Virus record (IMG/VR): IMGVR_UViG_3300046616_000314
Location: 248,001-312,000 of that record
Strand: one strand, 5' to 3'
Length of the DNA stretch: 64,000 nucleotides
Below, piece by piece: positions 39,122-64,000 of the stretch. Under the pieces are notes generated by a model. The model saw nothing but the letters and a program-made list of their open reading frames with translations. It ran no database searches and was not told the DNA's origin. A program made the position numbers and the translations under genes. How positions within the stretch are numbered: the stretch's first letter is position 1; each line of letters begins with the position of its first letter.

Positions 39122-39344
39122 GCCGCTGGGTCTGCACAAAGAACGCGAGCTAGCTAAACATTTGAGAAAACAATTGGCTTCGATTCCAAAGATGCCGATG
39201 GCTGTCACCGAAATGACGCCGAATGAATACGCACTCTTCGAATCACTAGCTAAAGTGATCGGCACGCTTCAATTCGTTTCCGATTATATTGATCCCGTCA
39301 CTCGGGAATCACGCCGTTTGGTTGAACATTCAAAGATTACTTGA
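39102..39344 (+). CDS. Hypothetical protein
   Basis: Overlapping ORF in a co-directional run. Confidence 0.6.
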   Translation: MTEKKSKPLGLHKERELAKHLRKQLASIPKMPMAVTEMTPNEYALFESLAKVIGTLQFVSDYIDPVTRESRRLVEHSKIT

Positions 39345-46777: not shown

Positions 46778-46837
46778 TTGCACCGCTTTGGTTTTTGTGC
46801 GATGATACCTTGTCTTTTAGATGAGGAAACAATTTCC

Positions 46838-47557
46838 ATGACGACAACCGTGTCTGCCTCGCAGACTGAAACCTACGATGTTGGTCTGCGCGCTTTCATG
46901 ACCGGCGTCTACAATCGCATGTTCGGTGCCATCGCCCTCACCGGCATTCTTGCCTATCTTGCGAGCATCGAGCCCCTGAAGTCGCTGTTCTTCACGCTCA
47001 ATGACAAGGGTCAACTGACCTATACCCTGTTGGGTATCGTCGTCGCCTTCGCACCGCTGGGCATCATCCTGGCTCAAGGCTTCCTGAAGTCCGTGAGCGG
47101 CAAGTTCGTTCTCTGGTCCGTCTCGGCACTGTTCGGGTTGAGCCTGGGTTCGATCTTCCTGAAATATACCGGCGGGTCCATCGCTTCGACGTTCTTCGCC
47201 ACGGCGGCGGCGTTCGGCGGTCTGAGCCTGTGGGGTTACACCACCAAGCGCAATCTGAGCGGTTGGGGTAGCTTCCTTCTGGTCGCCCTTATCGGGCTGA
47301 TCGTGGTGTCGCTGATCAACGTGTTCCTGCTGCATTCGAGCGGCTTGGACTTGATCGTGTCGGGTGCCGGGGTTCTGATCTTCGCGGGCTTCATCGCCTA
47401 CGATACGCAGACGACCAAGAACTTCTACTCGGAGTCCCTGTCGTCGTCGGAACTGGGTGACGTGCAAGATTCGGCTGCACTGAACCTCTATCTCGACTTC
47501 ATCAACCTGTTCCTGTACCTGCTGCGCTTCATGGGCGTCGGCAAGTCCAGCGACTAA
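46838..47557 (+). CDS. BAX inhibitor-1/YccA family membrane protein
   Basis: YDVGLRAFMTGVY, YTTKRNLS, IFAGFIAYDTQ, ALNLYLDFINLFLYLLR. Confidence 0.92.
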   Translation: MTTTVSASQTETYDVGLRAFMTGVYNRMFGAIALTGILAYLASIEPLKSLFFTLNDKGQLTYTLLGIVVAFAPLGIILAQGFLKSVSGKFVLWSVSALFGLSLGSIFLKYTGGSIASTFFATAAAFGGLSLWGYTTKRNLSGWGSFLLVALIGLIVVSLINVFLLHSSGLDLIVSGAGVLIFAGFIAYDTQTTKNFYSESLSSSELGDVQDSAALNLYLDFINLFLYLLRFMGVGKSSD

Positions 47558-50938: not shown

Positions 50939-52867
50939 ATGCGTTATCGTGACATTATCAAGGAAAATGGTGGACTCGTTGTCCCTGGTGTGAACACCAC
51001 TCCTGACGTTCAGCCAGGAGAGATCGCGCGCCAAGCCGCCAAGCTTGGTTTCAAAGTTGACGCCAACGGATTGCCGCCCATCTGGACGGGTCACGATGCC
51101 TCTACGGGCGCCAAGGACACCCCTAACAAGGGCGAAGCGTTCTATAAGAAGAATGGTGCCCGCCCCAACAAAAAAGCCCCTAAGCTCAAGAAAAACGTGT
51201 CCGAAAGCGTACTCGTTGAGAGCTTGCGCGGTTGGTTTTGGAATGCAAACACTGGGGAAACTTTAGACATCCCCGGAACCCAAATGATGCACGTTGAGTA
51301 CATCAAGGGTTATCCAGAAAATTTTGGCTTGTCGATTGCAGACGTTAAAGACGTAAATCTACGTAACTCGATTGAAGCTGGCAAATTACTACACATGGTA
51401 TTGGCGATGGGCTGGATTCGTTGCGCGAATTCCTTCTCCGGTCACACCGCATTTTTGAACGCAGCTTCGAAGCGTTACGCCAATATGGCAATCAAACATT
51501 TTGCTAAGATGTTTACCGAGCTAGTGGTTGAGATCACCGAGAACGGTGAAGCCCCTGGTGGAGGCGTTAGCTTCCGATTGAAAGACCCCATGGCGGTGCG
51601 TCAATTCCTTCGTACGGGTGTAACCGGTGAAGAATGGATTGACGATCAGCTTTCCGCTCTAACCGAAGCTCGCCGGAATCCTGAACAGAATAGAGGCGAA
51701 CGAAATCAAGGCTTCGGAGCCGCCCTAAAGAACTATATCGGACCCGATAGCTTCATCAGCTTTACAATGATTGACAAGGTTGGCGCCAACCCGCGCACGC
51801 AATTTTCTACGCCCATAGGCATCTATACCTATCCGCTTGACGAAGAAACTTGGCAAGACGTGATGGATGACGATATTCCGTTCGCTGGGGATTTGAAATA
51901 CATCAACATTATCAAGTCCAGAGCTTCGAAAGTCATGGACAGCGCGAATTACGCACAAGGCGATATGGTCAGCAATGAAATCAAATTGCGCGAATGCTTA
52001 CTAGACTATTGGATGGAAGACCCGGATGGCATCTATCAATTCTTGAAGGATGCTCAGACTTCGGCATTCCGAAAGAAGAATTCTCCTTTCATGGCGATGA
52101 CATGGAATCAAACACGCTGGGTAGCCATGGCAATTAGCACGGCTCGTAAGAACAAAACTCTTGACCCGGAAAAACGTTTGACACTCGTTGACGTTGCGAA
52201 TCATGTAGCTAAAGAATATGACGACAACTGGAACAGTAATCCGCAGTTGTGGAATCACGTTCTATCCAATGTTCTCGGATACGATATGATCTTGGATCGA
52301 GGCGCGGGTATCATTCACAGTAATGAACCTAAGCAAGCACTGTTCTTGAAGCTCTCTGCTTTACAGTTGATGGAGCGCAAGATCAATCCAAACTGGAATG
52401 AAGATGCAAAGACGGAAAAGAAAATCACTATGGGTTATTTGCCCTTACTGATCGGAACAGAGCGTCTTCCAATCAATAAGATTTTCTGGGGGATCAATAC
52501 TGCCATCGCCAATAAGCGTGCTTATGACAATGATCAGGATATGCATAACGCCTTGGGCGGCAAGTACATAGTAACAATAAAAGACGATTTCAATAGTGAT
52601 TTCAAAGTCTTTGTAACTAATCTTCTAAATCATGTTGATGTCTCTAAGCTGAACGTAGGGCAAGCCAAAAGTTTGAATATTGGAATATATGAAATGTTCA
52701 AACATGCTGACGCAATCCGATCATTACCTCATGATATGGTTGTCGGTCTATGTGTGATGCTTAAGAAAGCAACTACTATACACCACGGACAACGAATCGC
52801 GCTTCCTGAATACATTCGTGGTTTCATAACGCCCGAAGAAGTCGAGAATATCAATGCTAATTACTGA
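50939..52867 (+). CDS. Multi-domain late protein (probable head-packaged) with C-terminal ART-like domain
   Basis: CTAAATA 4 nt before ATG; MRYRDIIKE; VPGVNTTPDV module; after LTEA: SFTMIDKVGANP..TPIGIYTYP...LGYDMILD..IIHSNEP.QALF. Confidence 0.8.
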   Translation: MRYRDIIKENGGLVVPGVNTTPDVQPGEIARQAAKLGFKVDANGLPPIWTGHDASTGAKDTPNKGEAFYKKNGARPNKKAPKLKKNVSESVLVESLRGWFWNANTGETLDIPGTQMMHVEYIKGYPENFGLSIADVKDVNLRNSIEAGKLLHMVLAMGWIRCANSFSGHTAFLNAASKRYANMAIKHFAKMFTELVVEITENGEAPGGGVSFRLKDPMAVRQFLRTGVTGEEWIDDQLSALTEARRNPEQNRGERNQGFGAALKNYIGPDSFISFTMIDKVGANPRTQFSTPIGIYTYPLDEETWQDVMDDDIPFAGDLKYINIIKSRASKVMDSANYAQGDMVSNEIKLRECLLDYWMEDPDGIYQFLKDAQTSAFRKKNSPFMAMTWNQTRWVAMAISTARKNKTLDPEKRLTLVDVANHVAKEYDDNWNSNPQLWNHVLSNVLGYDMILDRGAGIIHSNEPKQALFLKLSALQLMERKINPNWNEDAKTEKKITMGYLPLLIGTERLPINKIFWGINTAIANKRAYDNDQDMHNALGGKYIVTIKDDFNSDFKVFVTNLLNHVDVSKLNVGQAKSLNIGIYEMFKHADAIRSLPHDMVVGLCVMLKKATTIHHGQRIALPEYIRGFITPEEVENINANY

Positions 52868-54056
52868 ATTGTTTGAAGCACGTTCTAACCCAACGCAGAA
52901 CAAAGACAACCGAGCTTCGGATGTTTCTGAATATTTGCGCGGTCTAGACTACGAAACTGGCGAACTGTTTATGAGTTTTACTCAAATCGATAAAGTTGGC
53001 ATGAACCCGCAATCGACTTACAACACGCCACTAGGTGTGTATTGCTATCCGATCAATCGCCACACTATCGAAGATTACGACAACAACAGTCTTCCATTTG
53101 CGGGCGATGCCAAGTTCGTGAACATTATCAAGTCACGCGGTAGTCAACTGAATGTTCAGGACTATGGCGATGATGATCTAGCCGACGACTCCAAGCGGTT
53201 GACCAGATATCTACTTAAGATTTTTCCCGAAAATGAAAATGAGATTGATCAAATTCATGCGCTAGCCGTACAGGATGCCAAGAATGGTACTCATGGCAAG
53301 AAAACGGCGGCTTCTTATATCTGGAATTACACTCGCTGGGCAGCTTACTTGCTGGACATCAAAGACCCGAAGGCAATCATTCGTAAGATGTCGGGATTTG
53401 ATTCTACCACACCAAGCAAGACAGCCGCGACTTGGAATGCCGTCCTGCGTAAGGTGCTAGGATATGATTCGGTAGTCGATAACGGCTGGGGCATCATTCA
53501 CGAAAACGAACCGACACAGGCGGTGTTCTTGGATGTTCGTGGTTTCCAGTTAGTATCGCGCCGCGTGAACACCAATTGGTCAGGTCGCCTCCTGAAGAAA
53601 ATTAATCTGAGTACAGTTCCGTGGTTGTGGAAGAATAACAATATCGCTTTCCGTTCCATCCTCGCGGCTTTGGAAATTTTTATTACTAAGGCGCCCGTAG
53701 TGCTCAATCGCAAATATGAAGTGAACCGAGACAAACTTCGACAGGAAGTTCCAGGGTATTTTGCGGCATTGCGATCAGTGATAAGATACACGCATGTCAC
53801 TATGCAGGAAGCTAGTTATATCGCTCATGGTATCATGAGTCATATCCGCAATGGTGGTATCTTGGAACATCTGAACCAAGACGAACGATTGGAACTGTTG
53901 GAGTGGTGGCTACCATTTTTCCAAAAAGGCTTTTCTACCCAAACCGATTTGGCTAGCAATGAAACGTTCAAGAGAGATTACATGAACGTATTTGTTCACG
54001 TCCTAGACGACGCACATTATGCTAAATTTGAGGAATTTGTGGCTAATTATGGATAA
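52854..54056 (+). CDS. Paralogue of the C-terminal domain of 50939-52867
   Basis: MLITELFEARSNP; SFTQIDKVGMNP..TPLGVYCYP...LGYDSVVD..IIHENEP.QAVF. Confidence 0.8.
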   Translation: MLITELFEARSNPTQNKDNRASDVSEYLRGLDYETGELFMSFTQIDKVGMNPQSTYNTPLGVYCYPINRHTIEDYDNNSLPFAGDAKFVNIIKSRGSQLNVQDYGDDDLADDSKRLTRYLLKIFPENENEIDQIHALAVQDAKNGTHGKKTAASYIWNYTRWAAYLLDIKDPKAIIRKMSGFDSTTPSKTAATWNAVLRKVLGYDSVVDNGWGIIHENEPTQAVFLDVRGFQLVSRRVNTNWSGRLLKKINLSTVPWLWKNNNIAFRSILAALEIFITKAPVVLNRKYEVNRDKLRQEVPGYFAALRSVIRYTHVTMQEASYIAHGIMSHIRNGGILEHLNQDERLELLEWWLPFFQKGFSTQTDLASNETFKRDYMNVFVHVLDDAHYAKFEEFVANYG

Positions 54057-55320
54057 TACATTTGCAGTAATGTCGGCTGATGAATTTAGAGAATTTATCA
54101 ACCGCACGCGCGAGATCAATTCAGACCTAGCACCGGGGCATGACAATTTCCACACGGATCGAATCAAGTACGTCTATCCTTTGGATAAGAATGAGCATTT
54201 GGTTGTGCTCAACGGTGATCACATTATTGCTATGGCAGGCGTTGAAACCAATCCGTATGACCATGAACAGCTTTGGATTAAGTATGTAAGCGTTGACCCA
54301 GAATATCGCGGTCAAGGTCTAGGGCGTTTCCTTCTAGAAAAGGTTTTCCAATACGCGGTCGCCCATGGTCAGAAGGTCAAGAATAGCAGCTTCACCGAAC
54401 TAGGCGCCGAACGTCTCAAGCATCTGCACCCGGAATTCGAGAAGAAATATCCACAAGCTGCATTCGCCCGAAACGAACAGGGTAAGTACGTAAACTCTCG
54501 CGGTCAGGTCATGGAAGAATGCAACTTCACGCTTGAGCGCGAAGCGGCGAGCCATCTACCTACGGAATGGCTGAACGAAGCATCGACCGAAACCCCGGAT
54601 GCCCCAACGGTCGATACGACCAAGGATGGTCAGACGATCACCTTTGAGCGTTTCAAGGATATCGAAGGCAATAAGAATCGCGGCTGGCGCGTAGACAAAA
54701 TCGAAGCCAAGATCGGTAACGAGTTAGTGGGCTACATTAAGATTTCGTATATTCCGAAGACTCGCTTCAGACAATATTACAAGAGTGTCTTCAATTTTGC
54801 TCATCAGATGCTAGGTCAGACTGTCTTTCCATTCGGAAAAGAAACTGCCTCACTAGAAAGCTTGAATAACAAAGAATTGTTTGACGCACTCTACCGTGTA
54901 TACAGAGAAAAGAGTTACAGTTTAGCCGAGCAACTAGACCCTAAGATGCCACGCAAGCAAGTTATGCTTTTGCTTAAGAAGCAAGAGTTGGCGTGGATGA
55001 ACGATGAAACTAACGAACCGTATGGTGAGAAATTCAAGAAGTTCTATCGCTACCACGTTGATAAGCCGATGGTCGATGCGATTCGCGTCGAAGATGGTAG
55101 CGGATCATTGGGTACCGCCGGTAAGCCGTCACATTTGCGTAGAGGAATCGGGCGCAAGCTCTATGCCGCCGCGTCAGAATGGATGCAAGAACGCGGTCTA
55201 CGACTACACGCATCGGGTTGCCAGACGAACGATGCCAAGGCGTGCTGGACAAAGTTTGATTCTGAAGGCGGCGTTAAGAGCGATGCCGATGGACGCCGTT
55301 ATATCGATTTCATGAAATAA
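54049..55320 (+). CDS. Tandem GNAT acetyltransferase-domain protein
   Basis: Motif A twice: VSVDPEYRGQGLG and HLRRGIGRKLY...SGCQTNDAKACW. Confidence 0.8.
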   Translation: MDNTFAVMSADEFREFINRTREINSDLAPGHDNFHTDRIKYVYPLDKNEHLVVLNGDHIIAMAGVETNPYDHEQLWIKYVSVDPEYRGQGLGRFLLEKVFQYAVAHGQKVKNSSFTELGAERLKHLHPEFEKKYPQAAFARNEQGKYVNSRGQVMEECNFTLEREAASHLPTEWLNEASTETPDAPTVDTTKDGQTITFERFKDIEGNKNRGWRVDKIEAKIGNELVGYIKISYIPKTRFRQYYKSVFNFAHQMLGQTVFPFGKETASLESLNNKELFDALYRVYREKSYSLAEQLDPKMPRKQVMLLLKKQELAWMNDETNEPYGEKFKKFYRYHVDKPMVDAIRVEDGSGSLGTAGKPSHLRRGIGRKLYAAASEWMQERGLRLHASGCQTNDAKACWTKFDSEGGVKSDADGRRYIDFMK

Positions 55321-56148: not shown

Positions 56149-57942
56149 CTAGTTCCGCCAGCGGTTCACGATGGGATAGCGACGATCCCGACCAAAAATC
56201 TTGCTTCCGATCTTAACACCGGGAGCCGCTTGGCGACGCTTGTATTCAGCGTTATCCACAAGTTTGCGGATTTTCTGAACAACATCCAATCGAACTTCAA
56301 GTTCGACAACGATGTCAGCGACCGACAGTTCTTCTTCGATCATCGCCTTGAGGATCGAATCGAGAACCGGATAGGGCGGCAGGCTGTCTTCGTCCTTTTG
56401 ATCGGGACGCAGTTCAGCCGAAGGCGGCTTCACGATGATCTCTTCGGGAACCACTTGAGTTGCCCGACCCAAGAAGCCAAATTCCGTCAGATATTTTTGC
56501 GGAATGGCATTGCGCCAGCGGCACAAGTCCCAAACCGTCGTCTTGTAGCAATCCTTGATCGGATTGAAGCCACCGCTCATGTCGCCGTAGAGGGTCGAGT
56601 AACCCACGCTGACTTCCGACTTGTTGCCGGTGGTCAGGAGGATATGACCCTCTTGGTTGGAGATCGCCATCAGGATAGTACCACGGGCACGCGCCTGGAT
56701 ATTTTCATCCGCAACGCCTTCAAGCTCACGAAGACCAGCAGTCATACCCTTTTCGTACTGGGCACTGCTATAGGCAACGCGCAGCGAATTCACGACGTTC
56801 TCAATCGGGATGGTTCGCATTTGCGCACCAAGGCGATCAGCCCCGGCTTCTGCATCCGATAGCGAGTGATCCGAAGAGAATGCCGAAGGCAGGCGAACCA
56901 AGTGAACGTTCTCGGGACCGATGGCGTCACAGGCGACAGCCGCGACCAGACCGGAGTCCACCCCGCCGCTGTAGCCGAGAACCACTGACTTGAAGCCTTG
57001 CTTTAGAAGGTAGTCACGGGTACCGAGCACGACAGCTTGATAGATTTCCTGTTCGTGTGGTGTAACGATCTTCGGATAAAGATGCAAGGGAGCCCGATTT
57101 TCCGGCGGCTTGATCCAGTGCGAGAACGAACCGTCATCGCGCACCGAGCCCACAATCGTAGTCGGAACGCCCGCGTCATTATATTCGAAATGGCGCGAAC
57201 GGGTTTGCGGGTGGAATTCGAAGGCGAACAAACCTTCTTTGAAATATGGCGCCGACTGATAGCCCTTGGCGTCGTAGTAGAACGATCCGCCGTCGAACAC
57301 CAGTTCGTCTTGACCACCGATCATGTTGACGTACAGGAACGGCAAGCCGGTTTCCTTGATGCGGTTGGCGATCACTTGGTGACGAGTGACATTCTTACCG
57401 GCTTCGAACGGTGAACCGTTGATGCTCAGAAGGAACGTGGCGTCATTGTCCGACAGCGAACGGCTCACGCTGGGGAACCAGCAGTCTTCGCAGATCATCA
57501 GACCGATGCGTTGACCCCGGAATTCGATGGGAAACGGTTCGGCGGTATTTGCTTCGAACACGCGCTTTTCATCGAACACACCGTAGTTCGGTAGTTCGGT
57601 CTTGTGGATCAGATCGACCTTCTTGAGAACCGGATCGATCAAGTACGCACTGTTGCGCGGTTTGACGTTGCCCTTCGTCGGCGTGCCGAAGATGATCCCG
57701 GCGTCCATGAAGCCGCCGCCCATGACAGCATCAATGATGCGTTGGTTGGCGCGTTCAACCGCGTCCATGAACGAATGGCGCGACACCAAGTCTTCGATGG
57801 GATAGCCGGTCACGGCGCACTCTGGGAAGACGACCAGATCAAAGCCCGATTTTGCGGCGTTCTCGTATTGGGCAATGATTTGATCCGCGTTGCCGACGAT
57901 ATCACCGACGACCGGGTTAAATTGAATGACAGCAATTCTCAT
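56149..57942 (-). CDS. nadE: Glutamine-dependent NAD+ synthetase
   Basis: Nitrilase-fold glutaminase with E-K-C triad (FPECAVTGY, KTELPNYGVFDEKR, ICEDCW) plus synthetase SGGVDS, ENIQARARG, TGNKSE, YKRRQAAPG. Confidence 0.97.
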   Translation of the reverse strand: MRIAVIQFNPVVGDIVGNADQIIAQYENAAKSGFDLVVFPECAVTGYPIEDLVSRHSFMDAVERANQRIIDAVMGGGFMDAGIIFGTPTKGNVKPRNSAYLIDPVLKKVDLIHKTELPNYGVFDEKRVFEANTAEPFPIEFRGQRIGLMICEDCWFPSVSRSLSDNDATFLLSINGSPFEAGKNVTRHQVIANRIKETGLPFLYVNMIGGQDELVFDGGSFYYDAKGYQSAPYFKEGLFAFEFHPQTRSRHFEYNDAGVPTTIVGSVRDDGSFSHWIKPPENRAPLHLYPKIVTPHEQEIYQAVVLGTRDYLLKQGFKSVVLGYSGGVDSGLVAAVACDAIGPENVHLVRLPSAFSSDHSLSDAEAGADRLGAQMRTIPIENVVNSLRVAYSSAQYEKGMTAGLRELEGVADENIQARARGTILMAISNQEGHILLTTGNKSEVSVGYSTLYGDMSGGFNPIKDCYKTTVWDLCRWRNAIPQKYLTEFGFLGRATQVVPEEIIVKPPSAELRPDQKDEDSLPPYPVLDSILKAMIEEELSVADIVVELEVRLDVVQKIRKLVDNAEYKRRQAAPGVKIGSKIFGRDRRYPIVNRWRN

Positions 57943-57944
57943 TT

Positions 57945-58286
57945 TTATTCCTCAATATCAACGGGAGTGATATGCCAAACCGAACGGCTCTGGGGTTTCA
58001 CTCCGGTACGCATGGCGTCCATCACTTGACTGATATTACTGATTCCGCCAGTAATTTCAACAAAGCCAACGCCGACGATGTTTAGGGCAAGCGCATCCGC
58101 ACCCGCCGTGATGTTTTGAACCTTGTCATTCTTAAGAATGATTTCAGTACAATCGACCAAGTTCTTGATGTTCTTGATCGCTTTCACGTGTCCAATTTTC
58201 AGAGCCACCTTGGCTGCATCATCTTCATTGTGGGCGAAGATGCTGCAACCAGAGTTGGCAGAATTGGTGATGCGGTAGATACGCAT
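57945..58286 (-). CDS. Hypothetical protein inside the NAD operon
   Basis: 113 aa ORF abutting pncA and nadE. Confidence 0.7.
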   Translation of the reverse strand: MRIYRITNSANSGCSIFAHNEDDAAKVALKIGHVKAIKNIKNLVDCTEIILKNDKVQNITAGADALALNIVGVGFVEITGGISNISQVMDAMRTGVKPQSRSVWHITPVDIEE

Positions 58287-58931
58287 TTAGTCCTCGTGCG
58301 GATAGGCGTGAGCGAAGGTCAGGTTTTCGTTACCCGGAAACTCTTCCAAGATAACTTGCTGCATGTCGCGCACGATGCCCTTGGTCAGGTCAGCCATGAC
58401 GATCACCTTGAAGCCACGCTTCAGGAAACCTTCAATCGCCCAAAAGACGCAGAAGTCGGCAGCAAAACCGGTGATGATGATCGTATCGACGCCTTGCGCC
58501 TTCAGATCGGCGAAGAATTCATCGCGATCATAGTACGAGTTGGTCAGCGCGAGACGCAGATCGCGCAGATACAACTTGTCTTCTTCCCACATATTGAAGA
58601 CGCCCTTTTCCAGGGCATAGACCGGGATGGCGAAATTGATCAACGCCGGATTGATGACGTTCTCCCAACCGGGTGTGCCCTTTTCACAGTGCAGATTGAA
58701 GCCTGGGGCGCCCACTTCCGGGTTGCCGAGATTTTCCGGCGAGCCGATGAAGGTTTCTTCGGTGTGCGTATCGAAGGTGTTCAGAACACCCGCGATTTCG
58801 TCAGGGTTCAAGCTGGCGTTCCAACGCAGCAGCTTGGAAACCACGGCTTCAGCACCTTCCACCGGCAGGGCAAAGCCCTTGAAGATGAAATCGGCTTGGG
58901 TATCAACGTTGACCACAAATTTGTTTTTCAT
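58287..58931 (-). CDS. pncA: Nicotinamidase (isochorismatase family)
   Basis: VDTQADF, DTH, HC..GTPG, KG, GFAADFCV catalytic D-K-C and metal ligands; operon context. Confidence 0.9.
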   Translation of the reverse strand: MKNKFVVNVDTQADFIFKGFALPVEGAEAVVSKLLRWNASLNPDEIAGVLNTFDTHTEETFIGSPENLGNPEVGAPGFNLHCEKGTPGWENVINPALINFAIPVYALEKGVFNMWEEDKLYLRDLRLALTNSYYDRDEFFADLKAQGVDTIIITGFAADFCVFWAIEGFLKRGFKVIVMADLTKGIVRDMQQVILEEFPGNENLTFAHAYPHED

Positions 58932-58943
58932 AATATTTTTTCC

Positions 58944-60278
58944 TTAAACCAGAACCGGAGCACCATCGAGACCTTCGATCCCGAACAGTGCGCGGTAGCG
59001 GTCCACTTCAGAGGCGGGACCAGTTGCCTTGTTATAGTTGTCCGACATCTTCACGGCAGGACGCCCATCGGCATCCTTGATCTTGGCAACAACCGAGATC
59101 GAACCCATGTAGTCGTCAGCTTCGCCAGGGACGCAGCCATAGAAATCGTTCGACAGGTTGGTACCCCAACCAAAGCCCATGCGGACCTTGCCACGGAAGT
59201 AGGCTTCGATTTCCAAGATGTCTTCACCGTGGGTGTCGTAGCCATCGATCTTGACATCAAGACCGTCGCTGAAAATAATCAGCTTTTCTTGCGGGTTCTC
59301 GCCGTGCGTCTTCCAATATTTGATCAGTTCGTCACCGCCAGGAATCGGCTTCTTGGAGTCGGGGCGAGCACCCGTCCACTGAGAAACCCATTGCGGGGCA
59401 TTCTCAAGGAACTGGGTCGTGCCGAACGTGTCGGGCAGGAAGACCAGCAGTCCGCCGCGATATTGCGCCGCCCACTTCAGGAGCACCTTGTATTGTGCAT
59501 CCTTCAGTTCGGCATCGTCTTGCGCCAGAGCCGCCAGGGTCATCGGTAGTTCATGGGCGTTCGTGCCCTTGGCTTCCAAACCATGCTTCATGGCGAGATA
59601 TGCGTTCGACGTACCGGTGAAGCGGTCGCCAAGAACTTCCTTCGCCAGCAGCATGGCGTATTCTTGCCAAAGGAAGCTATGGCGACGGCGAGTGGCGAAG
59701 TCCGTCAGGTTCAGGTCTTCGACAGTCGCCAGCTTTTCGAGCTTGGCGTACAGCTTCGCCTTGGCGCGGGCATACATGATGTCGATTTGGGTAGCCGTCA
59801 GCTTTGACATCCGCGAACGAGCAAGAAGCTCATTGATGATGGTCAGTGCGTAGATTTCCCAAAGCGTCACTTCGGTCCAAGTGCCGTGGAATTCGAGGAT
59901 GTATTGACCGGTTTCTTCGTCAACTTCCAATGAATATTCCGGCAGTTGGAACGTCTTCAGATATTCGATATAGCCCGGCTTGAACAGTCGGTCTTGACCG
60001 TAGAAGGTGTTTCCCTTGAGCCAGTGAATCTCGTTCGGCTGGAAACGCAGCGTGCGAGCATGGTCGAGTTGCGCGCGGAGTTGCTTGATATTGATGTTCC
60101 GCGCGAGCTTCACTCGCTTGGTACGATTGGTGACGGCGAACGTCACCTTCGTATTGAAGAAATCTTCACGGATAAGCTGTTGCATCAGCAGCTTATAAAA
60201 ATCGATGTCCAGCAGCGACCGAACGATGGGGTCGATGTCGTAAAGAAGGGCGTCTTTGGCGCGTTTTGCAAAATCCAT
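58944..60278 (-). CDS. pncB: Nicotinate phosphoribosyltransferase
   Basis: SLLDIDFYKLLM, DFATRRRHS, GTSN, GTNAHE, LPDTFGT, RPDS, FSDGL, FGWGTNL, K(M)SDN. Confidence 0.96.
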   Translation of the reverse strand: MDFAKRAKDALLYDIDPIVRSLLDIDFYKLLMQQLIREDFFNTKVTFAVTNRTKRVKLARNINIKQLRAQLDHARTLRFQPNEIHWLKGNTFYGQDRLFKPGYIEYLKTFQLPEYSLEVDEETGQYILEFHGTWTEVTLWEIYALTIINELLARSRMSKLTATQIDIMYARAKAKLYAKLEKLATVEDLNLTDFATRRRHSFLWQEYAMLLAKEVLGDRFTGTSNAYLAMKHGLEAKGTNAHELPMTLAALAQDDAELKDAQYKVLLKWAAQYRGGLLVFLPDTFGTTQFLENAPQWVSQWTGARPDSKKPIPGGDELIKYWKTHGENPQEKLIIFSDGLDVKIDGYDTHGEDILEIEAYFRGKVRMGFGWGTNLSNDFYGCVPGEADDYMGSISVVAKIKDADGRPAVKMSDNYNKATGPASEVDRYRALFGIEGLDGAPVLV

Positions 60279-60283
60279 AATAA

Positions 60284-61375
60284 TTAAACTTTCTTAATCA
60301 GAGCTTCGGAGTCGCTGATCATCTTCCAATGATCTTCGAAATATTCGTAACGCGGAATGGTATCCGGGTCCTTCCAAACGGCGCGCTTGGCGTCCGACGC
60401 CGCGCGAACCTTCGGATACGCCAGGGCTTCGCGAACCTTGGTGATATCGGTCACGCCCGGCGGAATCTTCGGAGTCAGATTGATGAAGGTGGTGTGGCTG
60501 ACGGTGCGCTTGCGAGTCGAGCGATTGGGATCATCGTAGGTTTTTTCGCCGATGATGCTGTTGCGTAGAGTTTCGCGAGCGACCTTCAGACGGGTCTCTT
60601 CGTACAGTTCCTTGATCGCAGCGTCCGCAGCCGTTTGATTTTCGCAGTGACCACCGGGGACCGCCCACAGACCCTTACCGGGGAAGCCGCCGCGCTGGAC
60701 CAAAAGAACCTTGCGCGCTTGGCGAACGACCGAATCCGCCGTGTAGAAAATCGGCGGATAGGGAGCACTGTCCCATTGCCCCAGATAGTTTTGCATGAAC
60801 ACCTTCTCGGCAAGAAGGCTTTCAAGATATTCGGGGGTTTGACGGAATTCTTGAAGGAAGGCGATCACGCCTGGGGCGAGATATTCAGTCGCTTCGCCGT
60901 TCAGGAATTCCGAGACGAGGCGTTGATCTTCGACAATATATTTGTCGCGCGCATAGGTCGCGTTGATCCCACGGAAGTTGGGGACTTCGACGCTTTCCCA
61001 ATCGGGGAACTGCGACAGATAATAGCCGGTGGGTTGATCTTTCTTGTGACCGACAAGGGCGGTGGGATCATCTTGAACGATATCCCGCGTGGCATCATGC
61101 ACGGCGGCTTGCCATTGCGAAATGTTGCCATAGTCCATGACGTTGACGAACTTGACCCGACGCAGTTGTTCGGGAGGCAGCATACGCCGCCACATTTCTT
61201 CACGTTCAAATTCTCGGAAGGGAACATGGTCCCATCGCCGTGCGGCGAAAGAAGAACCGTTGACGACAACTAGTTCTTCGCATTCTTGTAGCCCGGCTGC
61301 AACTACGGCGCCGTGAGCTAGTGTTACTGGTTGACCGCGAACAACGGTCACACCGTGACGATAACGATACTTCAA
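60284..61375 (-). CDS. nadM: Bifunctional (Na)MN adenylyltransferase / Nudix ADP-ribose pyrophosphatase (NadM-Nudix)
   Basis: RGQPVTLAH (HxGH variant), VGHKKD..YYL..FP.W, INAT; Nudix PPIFYTAD..VLLVQR..PGKGLWAVPGG...KELYEET, ASDA. Confidence 0.9.
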   Translation of the reverse strand: MKYRYRHGVTVVRGQPVTLAHGAVVAAGLQECEELVVVNGSSFAARRWDHVPFREFEREEMWRRMLPPEQLRRVKFVNVMDYGNISQWQAAVHDATRDIVQDDPTALVGHKKDQPTGYYLSQFPDWESVEVPNFRGINATYARDKYIVEDQRLVSEFLNGEATEYLAPGVIAFLQEFRQTPEYLESLLAEKVFMQNYLGQWDSAPYPPIFYTADSVVRQARKVLLVQRGGFPGKGLWAVPGGHCENQTAADAAIKELYEETRLKVARETLRNSIIGEKTYDDPNRSTRKRTVSHTTFINLTPKIPPGVTDITKVREALAYPKVRAASDAKRAVWKDPDTIPRYEYFEDHWKMISDSEALIKKV

Positions 61376-61430
61376 GGTAAATCCTACCGAGCTATGGTAG
61401 CGCGTGGACTATTCCTGCGCCATGTTTTTA

Positions 61431-61459
61431 TTTATACCAAACTTTTTTCGTAAACGCAA
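61431..61459 (-). promoter_or_regulatory. Promoter of the NAD operon (TTGCGT-N17-TATAAA, overlapping TATAAATA)
   Basis: Both a sigma70-like spacing and an exact late consensus at 61429-61436. Confidence 0.55.
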
Positions 61460-61476
61460 TTAAAAAATGCGGGCAA

Positions 61477-61506
61477 GAAAAAGCCCGGCGATTGCTCGCC
61501 GGGCTC
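61477..61506 (-). terminator. Intrinsic terminator after mucR
   Basis: GAGCCCGGCGAG-CAAT-CGCCGGGCTTTTT (minus strand). Confidence 0.85.
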
Positions 61507-61535
61507 TTGTAGTCTCTATAGCTGGCGCCGAGAGA

Positions 61536-62090
61536 TTAGGCTTCGGTCGAAGCCAGATCAGCAGCGGCGTTCTTGGCTTCCGATTCCACGACGGTTTCCT
61601 TGGCGGGCTTGCGAGCCTTGGTCGCCTTCGGAGCCTTCGCAGCCGGGGCAGCAGCCTTCGCCTTGCGACCGCCTTGACCCAGACCCAGAGCCTTCGCCAT
61701 CGCCGAACGGGCTTCCGAGTAGGCGGGCGCCGTGGTCGGGTAGTCGTTCGGGAGACCGAACTTCGCCTTGTATTCGGCGACGGTCATGCCGTTGGTGGTC
61801 AGGTGACGCTTCAGGGTCTTGTAGGGCTTGCCGTCGATGAAGCTGATCAGCGCGTCGTTGGTCACGGACTTGCGGATTTGAGCCGGGGTCGCCTTGGCTT
61901 GCTCGTCAGCGACGACAGCGACCGGCGAAGCGGCGTTGGTCAGACCGGTCAGAGCCGCCGAAATGGCGCCGATGACGCCGGGGATGTCGGTCGCCGACAC
62001 GGCGTTGTGCGAGAAATAGGCACCAGCAACAGCGGCGGTCAGTTCGACGGTCGAAGTCGCGGACGACACGGGTTGAGTTTGATCAGTCAT
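61536..62090 (-). CDS. mucR: MucR/Ros family transcriptional regulator (Zn-free type) with Ala/Lys-rich tail
   Basis: ELTAAVAGAYFSHN, PAQIRKSV..DALISFIDGKPYKTLKRHL, YKAKFGLPNDYP.TAPAYSEARS.MAKALGLG. Confidence 0.95.
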   Translation of the reverse strand: MTDQTQPVSSATSTVELTAAVAGAYFSHNAVSATDIPGVIGAISAALTGLTNAASPVAVVADEQAKATPAQIRKSVTNDALISFIDGKPYKTLKRHLTTNGMTVAEYKAKFGLPNDYPTTAPAYSEARSAMAKALGLGQGGRKAKAAAPAAKAPKATKARKPAKETVVESEAKNAAADLASTEA

Positions 62091-62152
62091 ATTCGCTCTC
62101 TGTCTGTTTCACAAAAGGATGCCGCAACCATCAGCGGCGTTGGAGAGCCTTG

Positions 62153-62181
62153 AAATTAGTTCGCTGCTTTCAAGGTGTCAA
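62153..62181 (-). promoter_or_regulatory. sigma70-type promoter of mucR
   Basis: TTGACA-N17-TAATTT. Confidence 0.7.
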
Positions 62182-62413
62182 CAGCACTCATAGAGATTTT
62201 TTGATTTTATGCTGTTTTGGCAAGCCTAGACACTGATTTTAGACCAACGGATACATGAGCTAGATGCAAAAGGTTTAATGAAAAAATCAATAAAATCATA
62301 TAGTTATGGTGGAGGTTCCGTAGAGGCTCACCGCTTTGGGGGCTTCTGAAACTTTTTTTGCTTTTTTGCTTGGAACCAAAGCTTTTCGAAAGATATTGCG
62401 CGTAAAAGGGACC

Positions 62414-62914
62414 ATGAGTTATGATTATCAGATGACAACGAAACTTGATCTCGGCTTCAAACACGGTGGATTGGCTCGCCAGCTATCCAATCTCTACGCT
62501 TACCCTTTCGTGCTCGATGGCACGCAATGCGGCTCTATTGAGGGCTTTCTTCAGGGTGTGAAATTCCAGGGCTTGGAAGAACAAGCCTTGATTGCGTCTT
62601 TGCAGGGCTACGAAGCTTATAAGACCGGGCAACTAGGGAACGACTGGAAAGAAACTCAAACCCTGTGGTGGCAGGGTAAGGCTTTTCCTCGCCTTAGTAG
62701 AGAGTACCATACTCTCTTAGAGCGGGCGTACGATGCGTGCTTCGATCAGAACCCGGCTTTCGTACAAGCATTGATCGACAGCGGCATTGATGTCCTGACA
62801 CATTATATGGGGCATCACGATCCGCATAATTCGGTGCTCACCGAATGGGAATACATCTATCTTATGTATCGAGCGCGTACGAAGGCGTTCCAAGGGATCA
62901 TGGCAGAAACTTGA
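62414..62914 (+). CDS. NADAR-family hydrolase, T4 gp30.3/AdfN-like
   Basis: LSNLYAYPFVLDG..GSIEGFLQGVK...TLWWQG..F.R.S..Y..L..AY...QN..F..AL..S...LTH..G...SVLTE parallels T4 gp30.3 as I recall it. Confidence 0.85.
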   Translation: MSYDYQMTTKLDLGFKHGGLARQLSNLYAYPFVLDGTQCGSIEGFLQGVKFQGLEEQALIASLQGYEAYKTGQLGNDWKETQTLWWQGKAFPRLSREYHTLLERAYDACFDQNPAFVQALIDSGIDVLTHYMGHHDPHNSVLTEWEYIYLMYRARTKAFQGIMAET

Positions 62915-62964
62915 CAGTGCCTTAACGAAAGTTTATAGACAGGATTCCGGTCGAGGGAATTTCT

Positions 62965-63207
62965 ATGTCATCTGACGAATTTGGTATTTTGTTTCTCGCT
63001 GCGGTGTGTCTTGGACCATTTGTGTTAGTTTGTTTTTTTGCCCTGAACGAAAACCGCAACAAGGGCAAGTGGGAAACCGTCAAGGATGACGGGCGTTATT
63101 CCTATCAACAACACAAGGTGACGGGTAAGCGGCGCCTTTGGGTGTCTAAAGTTGGTCTCCTTCCTGTAAATCAGGATTGGGTAGACGGCAAAACTGATAT
63201 TCTTTAG
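62965..63207 (+). CDS. Small membrane-anchored protein
   Basis: N-terminal TM; TTGACA promoter-like element overlapping the upstream stop codon. Confidence 0.7.
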   Translation: MSSDEFGILFLAAVCLGPFVLVCFFALNENRNKGKWETVKDDGRYSYQQHKVTGKRRLWVSKVGLLPVNQDWVDGKTDIL

Positions 63208-63209
63208 GA

Positions 63210-63515
63210 ATGAAAATGACCGCTTCCGTCCGTCAGCCCGTCGTGTGGGTGAAATCCCCGGTGAAACAAGAAGAAGAAAACGCCCGATTGGCGCGTGAAA
63301 AATCTGCAATGATCGTCAAAGTGCAGGTTCCCTTCATTGAAGACGGCGAAGTGTCGGTGTATCGTGAAGGTCGAAAGGGTTTGAAGCACCAAGCCCTGAC
63401 CGTCGAAGAACAAGCCATGCTGGGCGATGACCGCAAGGCGCATTTTAAGGCGTTATGGAACGTCGATGCCGTTCGATGGGATTTGCTGAAGCGGGTTAAG
63501 GACCAAGCGTGGTAA
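63210..63515 (+). CDS. Hypothetical protein
   Basis: Gene-like ORF. Confidence 0.7.
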   Translation: MKMTASVRQPVVWVKSPVKQEEENARLAREKSAMIVKVQVPFIEDGEVSVYREGRKGLKHQALTVEEQAMLGDDRKAHFKALWNVDAVRWDLLKRVKDQAW

Positions 63516-63826
63516 CTTCCATTAAGTGGTATGCGCGGGTAAAAGAGACCTCTGGTGGAATTTTGAAAACGATTGACTGGGTTGAAGAAAATTGCCCCGG
63601 TTGGTCGTTTTTCGATATTAAAAGCAAAGATGGTCCGCTACCTGAAATCAAAAGTATTTTGAGCTTGAGTGCGATAGATGCACCCGAGCGCAATATGGAA
63701 TATGAAATCTATTTTGTTCAAGAAGAACATTTTGCGATATTTAAGCTATATAAGTCTGAAAGGATAATTGCATCTTCGACTGTTTGGGTAAGTAATATTC
63801 CCAATCTTTCGTGGGGACCAGAATAA
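63509..63826 (+). CDS. Hypothetical protein, FKLK family-like
   Basis: IYFVQEEHFAIFKLYK. Confidence 0.65.
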   Translation: MVTSIKWYARVKETSGGILKTIDWVEENCPGWSFFDIKSKDGPLPEIKSILSLSAIDAPERNMEYEIYFVQEEHFAIFKLYKSERIIASSTVWVSNIPNLSWGPE

Positions 63827-64000
63827 CCAATTATCATGATTAAGATTGAGCTAGATGTTAAGAATTCCGACATGCGTTCATTGCATGTGTGGCTCGACGC
63901 CAATTGCATTGGTTGGTGCTATCAAGGTGCAGGAAACCGTTTGTCCAACGAGCTTTGGGCAAAGAAAATGAACAAAAACATCGGCGCCCGCCAGAACGAT

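What the first reader, a model, noticed from the sequence alone, without database searches (positions are those of the whole stretch)
61536..62181. Phage-encoded MucR/Ros xenogeneic silencer
Seen: an intact MucR with its own sigma70 promoter and terminator and visibly high GC3. The Cys ligands are replaced (ISFIDG...RHLTTN), and there is a histone-like AAPAAKAPKATKARKPAK tail. Known: MucR/Ros is the H-NS-like silencer of AT-rich DNA in alphaproteobacteria, and in Caulobacter MucR1/2 gate cell-cycle and capsule genes. Inference: the phage may silence AT-rich host defence islands, act as a dominant-negative to free its own AT-richer genome from host MucR, or rewire capsule/pilus state.
Basis: partly seen in the sequence, partly recalled or inferred. 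Interest (0 to 1): 0.65.

Follow-up and report, generated by a model that had tools for sequence, protein, structure and literature searches.

The report
Jumbo phage carries a host-type MucR
A 561-kb T4-like phage from a rhizosphere metagenome carries an intact copy of the Caulobacter-type DNA silencer MucR, so the phage probably supplies its own silencer during infection; the missing zinc-binding cysteines that looked odd are normal for this bacterial lineage.

Summary
Window 61536-62090 (-) encodes an intact 184-aa Ros/MucR protein (Pfam 9e-37). It lies in a 561,116-bp virus record with a T4-type capsid gene. The nearest cultured relatives are Sinorhizobium and Agrobacterium jumbo phages, and neither has a MucR hit.

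The gene is the GC-richest ORF of the genome (63.8% against 48.1%). It has AT-rich flanks of its own, a TTGACA-N17-TAATTT promoter-like site of a class enriched 6-10 fold in this genome, and a strong hairpin terminator.

The Ser/Asp/His/Asn replacement of the zinc ligands is native to Caulobacter MucR1-type proteins and to the zinc-free Ml4/Ml5. The basic tail is also native to this lineage.

- **DNA-binding domain:** 91% identical to C. vibrioides MucR1, and it keeps the residues whose mutation gives loss-of-function alleles.
- **N-terminal oligomerisation domain:** only 31-52% identical to any relative, but it keeps the hydrophobic triad.
- **C-terminal extension:** 20 residues, acidic, and seen in none of the Caulobacter-clade relatives.

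Best reading: a functional silencer captured from a host, made by the phage. Whether it silences host loci, organises phage DNA or counteracts host MucR is untested. This is a new member of a known kind and of moderate interest.

The parts
61536..62090 (-). mucR coding sequence, 184 aa plus TAA stop (protein P0001)
   Evidence: ORF list and translation. Pfam ROS_MUCR E 9.2e-37 over the full profile. It is the only MucR match in the 561-kb record.
61947..62066 (-). N-terminal oligomerisation domain: two helices (residues 9-28 and 33-48)
   Evidence: AF2 model, pLDDT about 80. I36/V39/I40 align with the Brucella L36/L39/I40 triad, and A22/Y25/F26 align with the packing residues V22/Y25/V26 (PMC6250670, PMC11662661). 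It is only 31-52% identical to any relative. It has no Lys or Arg.
61896..61934 (-). flexible linker (residues 53-65)
   Evidence: pLDDT below 50 for residues 54-64. It is poorly conserved in the alignments.
61662..61895 (-). zinc-free Ros-type DNA-binding domain (residues 66-143); ligand positions S83, D86, H96, N100
   Evidence: 91% identical to C. vibrioides MucR1. Ros87 (2JSP) matches at E 9e-19 by sequence, and by Foldseek at probability 1.00, TM 0.53. R73, R95, L97, Y107 and R128 are conserved. dN/dS is about 0.16-0.27 against Caulobacter genes. A 205-bp core is 88% identical at DNA level to Caulobacter mucR.
61599..61661 (-). basic Ala/Pro/Lys-rich tail (residues 144-164; 7 K+R, no D/E)
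   Evidence: Sequence and charge count. It is disordered in the model. Shorter versions occur in the Caulobacter homologues. The tail contributes to DNA contact and c-di-GMP binding in S. fredii and Brucella MucR (PMC12560781, PMC11662661).
61539..61598 (-). acidic C-terminal extension (residues 165-184; 5 D/E, 1 K)
   Evidence: It is absent from all Caulobacter-clade relatives aligned. Only some Methylobacterium homologues have long mixed tails. It is disordered in the model. Its function is unknown.
61475..61508 (-). intrinsic terminator: 13-bp GC-rich stem, 4-nt loop, U-run
   Evidence: RNA fold of 61455-61540 (-): -35.1 kcal/mol, z -5.0. It separates mucR from the NAD gene cluster downstream.
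62153..62181 (-). sigma-70-like promoter candidate, TTGACA-N17-TAATTT, 63 nt upstream of the ATG
   Evidence: Sequence. The pattern class is 6-10 fold over-represented in the genome and concentrated in intergenic DNA. It has not been tested experimentally. Its 17-nt spacer and lack of an extended TG make it an atypical member (52 of 68 have a 16-nt spacer).
62148..62175 (-). perfect 8-bp inverted repeat (CCTTGAAA-N12-TTTCAAGG) overlapping the promoter spacer and -10; possible operator
   Evidence: Read directly from the sequence. No test was done and its significance is unknown.
62121..62138 (-). short GC hairpin followed by a T-rich run in the 5' leader
   Evidence: Listed as terminator-like by the scanner. 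It could be an attenuator or chance.

Best explanation
The gene encodes a functional MucR1-type nucleoid-associated protein that is competent to bind DNA and to oligomerise. A 561-kb T4-like jumbo phage of alphaproteobacteria captured it from a Caulobacteraceae-like bacterium.

Only the coding sequence was captured. It now sits between phage-type AT-rich flanks as a one-gene unit, with a sigma-70-like promoter (probably read by unmodified host RNA polymerase, so early; this is inference) and its own terminator.

Its zinc-free DNA-binding domain is nearly identical to that of host MucR1. It should therefore recognise the same AT-rich, TpA-containing DNA. Its N-terminal two-helix domain keeps the hydrophobic core needed for ring-shaped oligomers, so it should bridge and silence DNA.

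The most likely use is that the phage tops up or replaces host MucR during infection. That would keep the MucR regulon and AT-rich accessory DNA shut: G1-phase, surface, pilus and capsule genes, mobile islands and defence islands. The strongly diverged, uncharged N-terminal domain would make it a largely self-associating ('private') oligomer.

Shown: identity, intactness, host origin, conservation of functional residues, purifying selection, compositional foreignness and the transcription-unit signals.

Inferred: expression timing, DNA binding, oligomer state, targets and benefit to the phage.
For: - Family and architecture: Pfam full-length match; Ros87 by sequence and by fold; AF2 model with two N-terminal helices, a linker, the DNA-binding domain and a disordered tail.
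- Host origin: best hits are Caulobacter MucR at 60-71% identity. The tree places it in a Caulobacteraceae clade (SH-aLRT 90-93) on a long branch. GC and GC3 are the extreme of the genome. A 205-bp core is 88% identical to Caulobacter mucR while the flanks have no bacterial match.
- Function retained: the DNA-binding domain is 91% identical to C. vibrioides MucR1. R95, L97 and Y107 (MucR1 R85, L87, Y97; PMC4083442) and R73 and R128 (S. fredii R69, R125; PMC12560781) are kept. The triad I36/V39/I40 is hydrophobic (PMC6250670). dN/dS is 0.16-0.27 in the DNA-binding domain.
- Heterologous MucRs from Agrobacterium, Brucella, Bartonella and Sinorhizobium partially complement Caulobacter mucR1/2 mutants (PMC4241560), so a 91%-identical domain should work in such a host.
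- Unit structure: promoter class and terminator.
- Alphaproteobacterial host, independently supported: the capsid protein is 81% identical to that of Sinorhizobium phage Phosso and 67.5% to that of Agrobacterium phage Atu_ph07. The neighbouring NadM-Nudix gene is closest to genes of phages of Rhodobacter, Ruegeria, Mesorhizobium and Sphingobium.
- Real DNA: one 40-kb contig spans the locus with 0 differences in the rhizosphere run. Pieces of the flanks at 95-100% identity occur in two other studies.
Against: - No expression data: no RNA run holds the stretch.
- No binding, oligomer or phenotype data.
- The host is not identified. Caulobacteraceae is inferred from mucR itself, while the nearest cultured phages infect Rhizobiaceae. 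The one other gene tested, Bax1-I, is only 42-53% identical to any of 301 alphaproteobacterial genomes and gives no signal.
- The N-terminal domain differs at a packing position (Val to Ala at residue 22), has three helix glycines and no charged Lys/Arg. Single substitutions in this domain abolish oligomerisation and bridging in S. meliloti MucR2/3 (PMC13297338). Oligomerisation and bridging therefore cannot be assumed.
- The acidic extension has no precedent in the clade and could change DNA binding.
- No other phage of this group carries the gene, and no close relative of this protein exists among 5.8 billion proteins. Conservation across a phage lineage, which would argue for a selected role, cannot be shown.
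- A lytic phage has no obvious need to silence host genes that are already silent.
Confidence: 0.45

Rival explanations
1. Counter-silencer. The phage protein occupies the same AT-rich sites as host MucR, using an identical DNA-binding domain. Its private N-terminal domain and acidic tail stop it from bridging. It either forms non-bridging oligomers or poisons host MucR rings. Either way it frees the 48%-GC phage genome, which must look 'foreign' in a host of about 67% GC, from host silencing.
For: - The N-terminal domain is at most 52% identical to any relative while the DNA-binding domain is 88-92% identical.
- Val to Ala at a packing position, glycines in both helices, and no Lys/Arg.
- A unique acidic extension follows the DNA-contacting basic tail.
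- Precedents: S. meliloti MucR2/3 bind MucR1 sites but do not bridge, because of small N-terminal changes (PMC13297338). Truncated or point-mutant MucR1 is trans-dominant over MucR2 through hetero-oligomers (PMC4083442).
- The phage genome is 48% GC.
Against: - The three residues defined as critical for oligomerisation stay hydrophobic.
- The same split, with a divergent N-terminal domain and a conserved DNA-binding domain, separates ordinary Caulobacter paralogue groups: MucR1 against L086 is 36% and 92%. It is therefore not a phage-specific signature.
- One Caulobacteraceae MAG protein (L093) has the same Ala-Tyr-Phe / Ile-Val-Ile signature.
- Known anti-silencers are usually truncated proteins or DNA mimics, not full-length homologues (own knowledge).
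- The complex prediction that would bear on hetero-oligomers could not be run.
Confidence: 0.2
2. The phage's own chromatin or timing protein. The MucR copy acts mainly on the phage's 561-kb genome. It could coat or compact it, or shut off a temporal gene class such as early genes with AT-rich promoters, rather than acting on host genes.
For: - Measured against a GC-rich host, the whole phage genome is a MucR-type substrate at 48% GC.
- The gene's own upstream region is 41.6% GC, and MucR proteins repress their own promoters (PMC5881533, PMC7710501).
- An inverted repeat overlaps the promoter.
- Very large phage genomes commonly carry nucleoid-associated proteins (own knowledge).
Against: - The closest large relatives, Phosso at 469 kb and Atu_ph07 at 490 kb, manage without a MucR, so it is not a core requirement of this phage type.
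- The gene looks like a lineage-specific acquisition, being a compositional outlier.
- No repeated MucR-specific motif is known that could be scanned for; the published consensus is degenerate and simply AT-rich (PMC4083442).
Confidence: 0.22
3. Passenger gene: a recently picked-up host gene with no selected role in the phage.
For: - It is found in this one record only.
- Its GC3 is still host-like, 0.85 in the DNA-binding domain.
Against: - The frame is intact.
- dN/dS is well below 1.
- Synonymous divergence of 0.43-0.75 from every sampled bacterial gene gave time for decay.
- The flanks were replaced by phage-type promoter and terminator signals, with no bacterial flank retained.
Confidence: 0.1
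4. Assembly chimera: a bacterial mucR fragment wrongly joined into a phage contig.
For: - There is a sharp GC step at both ends of the ORF.
- Other contigs of bacterial mucR, at 85-90% identity, pile up on the DNA-binding-domain part in the same sample.
Against: - An independent assembly of the run gives one 40,159-bp contig across both junctions with 0 differences, at the same depth (38) as the flanks.
- The GC steps coincide exactly with the start and stop codons, not with read-length joints.
- The gene is no more than 88% identical at DNA level to any bacterial gene found.
- A watershed-run contig (62161-62353) covers the promoter and leader next to the gene.
Confidence: 0.03

Closest known systems
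Caulobacter MucR1 (CC_0933 / CCNA_00982) and the MucR1-type paralogues of Caulobacteraceae
   Same: - Same family and architecture.
- The DNA-binding domain is 91% identical.
- Same zinc-free Ser/Asp/His ligand pattern.
- Same conserved R, L and Y residues of the recognition helices.
- Same kind of Ala/Pro/Lys basic tail.
   Different: - Encoded by a phage.
- The N-terminal domain is only 31-44% identical, uncharged, and has Val to Ala at one packing position.
- The fourth ligand position is Asn instead of His. Asn also occurs in bacterial relatives, mostly Methylobacterium.
- About 7 extra N-terminal residues, a longer basic tail and a 20-residue acidic extension.
- Lower GC3 than the bacterial genes.
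Zinc-free Ros/MucR members Ml4 and Ml5 of Mesorhizobium loti
   Same: The first Cys is replaced by Ser, and the fold and DNA binding hold without metal. Ml5 still forms ring oligomers through a Leu/Leu/Ile triad (PMC9779718, PMC11662661). Together with Caulobacter MucR1, they show that loss of the Cys ligands does not mean loss of function.
   Different: They belong to a different lineage and are chromosomal.
MucR homologues annotated in other phages (Erythrobacter phages vB_EliS_R6L gp61 and ZS04, Mesorhizobium phage Cp1R7A-A1, two metagenomic phage records) and in IMG/VR contigs of 70 kb or less
   Same: They are phage- or prophage-borne full-length MucR genes. A review has noted phages as vehicles of mucR transfer (PMC7710501). 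None has been studied functionally in the papers found.
   Different: - They are only 37-42% identical to this protein.
- They are 133-149 aa with short tails. Two keep Cys/Asp ligands.
- Their genomes are 65-131 kb, against 561 kb here.
- None of the 34 IMG/VR loci lies on a contig over 70 kb.
Horizontally carried H-NS-family silencers (phage-encoded H-NS, Skennerton et al. 2011; plasmid 'stealth' H-NS-like proteins) and phage anti-H-NS factors (T7 gp5.5, T4 Arn)
   Same: The logic is the same: a mobile element brings its own copy, or its own antagonist, of the host's AT-rich-DNA silencer. These are cited in PMC7710501 and otherwise rest on own knowledge.
   Different: They are unrelated protein families. 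MucR is the convergent alphaproteobacterial counterpart (PMC9410896). Which of the two logics applies here is not known.
S. meliloti plasmid-borne MucR2 and MucR3
   Same: They are accessory-replicon copies with a conserved DNA-binding domain and an altered N-terminal domain. They bind MucR1 sites (PMC13297338).
   Different: They have Thr at a critical Val/Ile position, and MucR2 also has a 20-residue N-terminal extension. They are monomeric or weakly oligomeric and do not bridge. The phage protein keeps Val at that position (V39), and its oligomer state is unknown.

Membership tests
Ros/MucR family (Pfam PF05443) | Sequence match to the family profile above the curated threshold, over the full length | tested here: met
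   126.3 bits against a cut-off of 25.4, E 9.2e-37, profile positions 2-123 of 123. Confirmed on the genome record.
Ros/MucR family (Pfam PF05443) | C-terminal DNA-binding domain with the Ros87 fold | tested here: met
   phmmer against PDB: 2JSP chain A, E 9.2e-19, residues 68-143. Foldseek ranks 2JSP first, probability 1.00, TM 0.53 on the target, 51% identity, though E is only 0.014 for the whole model. AF2 pLDDT is about 80-84 over residues 70-120.
Ros/MucR family (Pfam PF05443) | Zinc coordination by Cys2His2 (Ros) or Cys-Asp-His-His (Brucella MucR, Ml1-3) | tested here: not met
   The positions read S83, D86, H96, N100. This places the protein in the recognised zinc-free subgroup (Ml4/Ml5, Caulobacter MucR1). 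It does not exclude it from the family (PMC9779718, PMC11662661). Actual metal content is not testable here.
Ros/MucR family (Pfam PF05443) | N-terminal two-helix oligomerisation domain with a hydrophobic triad (Brucella L36, L39, I40) | tested here: met
   Helices at 9-28 and 33-48. The triad is I36/V39/I40. The packing residues are A22/Y25/F26 where the usual pattern is V/Y/V. Whether rings form is not testable here.
Ros/MucR family (Pfam PF05443) | Conserved basic DNA-contact residues in the recognition helix and basic regions | tested here: met
   R73, K94/R95, R128 and a basic tail are present. L97 and Y107 are also kept. Residue roles are taken from PMC4083442, PMC12560781 and PMC11662661.
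Xenogeneic silencer / H-NS-like DNA bridger (functional class) | Preferential binding of AT-rich DNA, DNA-protein-DNA bridging, and repression of bound genes | not testable with these tools
   Only inferred, from 91% identity of the DNA-binding domain with MucR1 and from the retained triad. The altered N-terminal domain and acidic tail leave bridging open (PMC13297338 shows that bridging can be lost while binding stays).
   The residues whose mutation gives trans-dominant MucR1 alleles are intact (PMC4083442), which argues against a DNA-binding-dead decoy. Interaction with host MucR could not be predicted because the complex tool was unreachable in nine tries.
Phage-encoded gene (not bacterial contamination) | Physical linkage to phage hallmark genes on one molecule, with independent support for the junctions | tested here: met
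   Virus record with a T4-type capsid gene 25 kb away. Phage gp30.3 and the NAD module lie beside it. A second assembly spans the locus without differences.

The most novel reading that the evidence does not exclude
The phage protein is a purpose-built counter-silencer. It carries the host's own DNA-reading head on a private, uncharged oligomerisation domain, plus an acidic tail that folds back on the basic tail. It would out-compete host MucR on the AT-rich phage genome without bridging it. This would be the first MucR-directed anti-silencing device, and a full-length rather than truncated one.
Probability: 0.18. Interest if true: 0.7.

Novelty: new member of a known kind. Interest (0 to 1): 0.45.

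Why it matters
MucR is the alphaproteobacterial counterpart of H-NS. How mobile elements deal with it is largely unexplored: the reviews list replication and integration of phage genes as an open question (PMC9779718), and the papers found contain no functional study of a phage MucR.

This gene offers a natural experiment. A lytic-type megaphage keeps the host's DNA-reading domain almost unchanged while its assembly domain and tail have diverged. That separates target choice from oligomer behaviour. It can be tested directly in Caulobacter crescentus, where MucR1/2 reporters, mutants and ChIP tools already exist.

It also corrects a tempting misreading. Loss of the zinc ligands is the normal state of Caulobacter MucR1-type proteins and not a sign of a decoy.

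Tried and rejected
- **Complex prediction** (host MucR1 residues 1-56 with phage residues 1-62): nine tries, and the machine was unreachable each time. There is no result, so nothing is claimed about hetero-oligomers.
- **Word search on the N-terminal 65 residues alone:** it found only the query. At this database size a 65-aa query needs a high score, so this says only that there are no close relatives.
- **Synteny with relatives:** megablast of 58000-64000 against phages gave no match. The NadM-Nudix neighbour found no relative in IMG/VR. An 'empty site' comparison was therefore not possible.
- **Host inference from a second GC-rich gene (Bax1-I, 46778-47557):** 290 of 301 alphaproteobacterial genomes match, at only 42-53% identity, and no kinship labels were given. 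This was uninformative.
- **T4-type late promoter TATAAATA** downstream of mucR (61429): 20 copies in the genome against 23 expected. Rejected as chance.
- **Caulobacter cell-cycle companions** GcrA (PF07750) and CcrM-type methylase (PF01555): not found in the record.
- **Mosaic origin** (N-terminal and DNA-binding parts from different donors): GC3 is 0.71 against 0.85, and dS is higher in the N-terminal part. The same dS asymmetry appears between bacterial orthologues, and the counts are small. Not claimed.
- **Flanks of bacterial origin:** no similarity of either flank to 100 bacterial or viral mucR loci.
- **The search of protein representatives:** not used.
- It was re-run reading the stored protein by id.
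- **Operators' limits:** no alternative genetic code was used.
Full report
**What is there**

On the minus strand, 61536-62090 is an ATG-to-TAA frame of 184 codons. It matches the Pfam ROS_MUCR profile end to end (E 9.2e-37, 126 bits against a curated cut-off of 25.4). By sequence its only solved relative is the Ros DNA-binding domain 2JSP (E 9e-19, residues 68-143).

An AlphaFold2 model built on 16 relatives gives the textbook MucR layout:
- two N-terminal helices (9-28 and 33-48, pLDDT about 80);
- a disordered linker (54-64);
- a folded domain (66-138, pLDDT about 80-84);
- a disordered tail (140-184).

Foldseek puts 2JSP first (probability 1.00).

**Whose gene it is**

The window is positions 248001-312000 of a 561,116-bp virus record rated 97% complete, with a single MucR copy.
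- The record has a T4-type gp23 capsid gene. Its product is 81% identical to that of Sinorhizobium phage Phosso (469 kb) and 67.5% to that of Agrobacterium phage Atu_ph07 (490 kb).
- The gene on one side of mucR is a T4 gp30.3-family gene. On the other side is a run of NAD genes.
- The NadM-Nudix gene is closest to genes of phages of Rhodobacter, Ruegeria, Mesorhizobium and Sphingobium.

So this is a jumbo phage of an alphaproteobacterium. The stretch is held without a single difference by one 40-kb contig of a rhizosphere metagenome run, which is probably its source. Short pieces of the flanks at 95-100% identity occur in a watershed run and a freshwater run from other studies. No RNA run holds it, so expression is unknown.

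**Foreign in the phage, native in Caulobacteraceae**

- At 63.8% GC, mucR is the GC-richest of about 790 ORFs in a 48.1% GC genome. Its GC3 of 75.7% is at the 99.9th percentile.
- The intergenic DNA on either side is 41.6% and 47.5% GC.
- Among 5.8 billion proteins the best matches are MucR proteins of Caulobacter species and uncultured relatives, at 60-71% identity. Nothing is closer.
- In a tree of 114 relatives it falls inside a Caulobacteraceae clade (SH-aLRT 90-93, not starred), on a long branch and not inside any species cluster.
- A 205-bp core of the DNA-binding domain is 88% identical at DNA level to Caulobacter mucR. Neither flank resembles any bacterial mucR locus.
- In the source sample, further contigs at 85-90% identity pile up on that core. 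These are presumably the bacterial genes of co-occurring hosts.
- Only five of 50,697 phage records have any MucR hit, all at 37-42% identity. Phosso and Atu_ph07 are not among them. The gene is therefore a lineage-specific capture and not part of this phage type's core.

**The 'replaced cysteines' are not a phage feature**

Aligned to Ros, the four zinc positions read S83, D86, H96 and N100. C. vibrioides carries two MucR genes 20 kb apart. One reads Cys..Asp. The other reads Ser..Asp..His..His, and its numbering fits the published MucR1 alleles R85, L87 and Y97 (PMC4083442). So Caulobacter MucR1 is itself 'cysteine-less'.

Of 113 relatives collected, 78 read SDHH and 18 read SDHN like the phage. 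The set was fetched with patterns that include this motif, so the proportions are biased, but the existence of these forms is not. Zinc-free Ml4/Ml5 fold, bind DNA and, in the case of Ml5, form rings (PMC9779718, PMC11662661). The Ala/Pro/Lys tail is likewise present, in shorter form, in the bacterial proteins.

**What is special**

*1. The two domains have diverged very unequally.*
- The DNA-binding domain (66-143) is 91% identical to C. vibrioides MucR1.
- The N-terminal domain (14-52) is 31% identical to MucR1 and at most 52% to anything collected.
- The same asymmetry separates ordinary Caulobacter paralogue groups: MucR1 against another group is 36% and 92%. So the phage copy behaves like one more paralogue with its own assembly domain.

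*2. The N-terminal domain keeps its core but differs in detail.*
- It keeps the hydrophobic triad shown to be essential in Brucella MucR (L36/L39/I40; here I36/V39/I40).
- It has Ala for Val at one packing position, three glycines in the helices, and no Lys or Arg (PMC6250670, PMC11662661).
- One Caulobacteraceae MAG protein shares the Ala-Tyr-Phe / Ile-Val-Ile signature.

*3. The tail is longer.*
- After a longer basic tail comes a 20-residue acidic extension (5 Asp/Glu) that no Caulobacter-clade relative has.
- Only some Methylobacterium homologues have long mixed tails.
- Other phage MucRs are 133-149 aa with short tails.

**Signs of function**

- R95, L97 and Y107 correspond to the MucR1 residues whose substitution gives loss-of-function, trans-dominant alleles. 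All three are intact (PMC4083442).
- R73 and R128 correspond to residues important for DNA binding or c-di-GMP response in S. fredii MucR1 (PMC12560781).
- Against Caulobacter genes, the DNA-binding domain shows dS of 0.43-0.75 and dN/dS of about 0.16-0.27. There has been time to decay, yet the protein is under purifying selection.
- MucRs from four other genera partially complement Caulobacter mucR1/2 mutants (PMC4241560).

**Transcription unit**

- Sixty-three nucleotides upstream of the ATG lies TTGACA-N17-TAATTT.
- The pattern TTGACA-N16-18-TANNNT occurs 68 times in the genome against 6-11 expected, and 40 of those lie in the 9% of the genome that is intergenic. It is therefore a real promoter class of this phage. 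The mucR copy is an atypical member, with a 17-nt spacer and no extended TG.
- A perfect 8-bp inverted repeat overlaps its spacer and -10.
- Downstream, a 13-bp stem with a U-run (z -5.0) separates mucR from the NAD cluster.
- In T4-like phages sigma-70-type promoters are early promoters. This rests on my own knowledge, so early expression is an inference.

**How it most likely works, and the rivals**

*Best reading (0.45):* a working MucR1-type silencer made by the phage. It reads the same AT-rich, TpA-containing DNA as host MucR1 and assembles mainly with itself. It would keep the MucR regulon and AT-rich accessory DNA shut while the phage replicates. That includes the G1-phase, pilus and capsule control genes known in Caulobacter, and mobile or defence islands.

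*Counter-silencer (0.20):* same head, non-bridging body. [quoted passage not shown] Nothing in the sequence shows that oligomerisation is lost.

*Phage chromatin or timing protein (0.22):* it would act on the phage's own 48%-GC genome. This is possible, but the closest large relatives do without it.

*Passenger gene (0.10) and assembly chimera (0.03):* both are unlikely, for the reasons given under the rivals.

The prediction that might have borne on hetero-oligomers could not be run.

**Comparison and novelty**

Phage-borne mucR genes are already annotated (Erythrobacter phage R6L gp61, PMC5463345). A review names phages as vehicles of mucR transfer (PMC7710501). A survey of 224 jumbo phages does not mention MucR or H-NS (PMC7824862), and I found no functional study of a phage MucR.

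This is therefore a new member of a known kind. It is the first seen here in a jumbo phage, and it has a divergent assembly domain and an unusual acidic tail. Interest is moderate. The finding is testable with existing Caulobacter tools, but phage-borne silencer homologues are an established idea from the H-NS world.

**Limits**

- The host is not identified. Caulobacteraceae is the donor of the gene by phylogeny, not a proven host.
- There are no expression, binding or oligomer data.
- The relative sets were fetched with sequence patterns and are biased towards the Ser/Asp type.
- One unpublished genome (G042) was among 301 searched.

Noticed in passing
window 56149-61375 (-): mucR sits at the head of a minus-strand NAD+ module. 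It comprises NadM-type NMN adenylyltransferase fused to Nudix (60284-61375), nicotinate phosphoribosyltransferase (58944-60278), an isochorismatase/nicotinamidase-like gene (58287-58931), a 113-aa ORF and a glutamine-dependent NAD synthetase (56149-57942). Together these make a near-complete Preiss-Handler/salvage route, fuller than the 2-3 gene NAD sets described for jumbo phages (PMC7824862). It probably counters NAD-depleting defence. All genes are 53-55% GC, above the genome mean.
   Followed up: partly
window 45578-47557 (+): An ADP-ribosyltransferase of the 'polyvalent protein' type (ART-PolyVal, E 1.5e-18) is directly followed by a Bax1-inhibitor/YccA-family membrane protein (E 1e-49). 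The latter has the highest GC3 (0.77) of the ORFs listed in the genome-wide table, slightly above mucR's 0.757. It is only 42-53% identical to alphaproteobacterial homologues.
   Followed up: partly
whole record G000; examples in window at 39341, 47967 (+) and 31888 (-): A phage promoter class, TTGACA-N16-(often TG)-TAnnnT, occurs 68 times against 6-11 expected and mostly in intergenic DNA. It could be used to map the early regulon of this phage. The T4 late motif TATAAATA is not enriched (20 against 23 expected).
   Followed up: partly
window 62148-62175 (-): A perfect 8-bp inverted repeat with a 12-nt spacer overlaps the spacer and -10 of the mucR promoter candidate. It may be an operator for another regulator or for autoregulation.
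   Followed up: no
window 62121-62138 (-): A short GC hairpin followed by a T-rich run lies inside the 5' leader of mucR, about 30 nt before the start codon. It is terminator-like and could be an attenuator or chance.
   Followed up: no
G000:C1:334319-337573 (L123/L124) and the record as a whole: At 561 kb the record is larger than its nearest cultured relatives, Phosso (469 kb) and Atu_ph07 (490 kb), while the capsid protein is 81% identical to Phosso's. No end repeats are reported, and mucR occurs only once, so there is no sign of a concatemer.
   Followed up: partly
window 61467-62153 (+): A 228-aa ORF runs antisense to mucR. It is an Arg/Gly/Ser-rich shadow frame of the kind that high-GC genes produce. 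A naive longest-ORF caller picks it instead of mucR.
   Followed up: yes
window 58500-63500 in runs X2 (watershed) and X3 (freshwater): Low-depth 150-195-bp contigs at 95-100% identity are scattered over the NAD genes, the mucR promoter region and downstream genes. Close relatives of this phage therefore exist outside the rhizosphere sample. Coverage is too thin to say whether they carry mucR.
   Followed up: partly
window 54019-55320 (+): A 433-aa protein with an N-terminal GNAT acetyltransferase domain and a long unassigned C-terminal part. The neighbouring 400-aa and 642-aa ORFs (50939-54056) have no Pfam match.
   Followed up: no
L125 (Mesorhizobium phage Cp1R7A-A1): This 131-kb phage also carries both a MucR homologue (Cys/Asp type) and a NadM-Nudix gene, about 28 kb apart. 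The pairing of the two functions in alphaproteobacterial phages may be worth a census.
   Followed up: no
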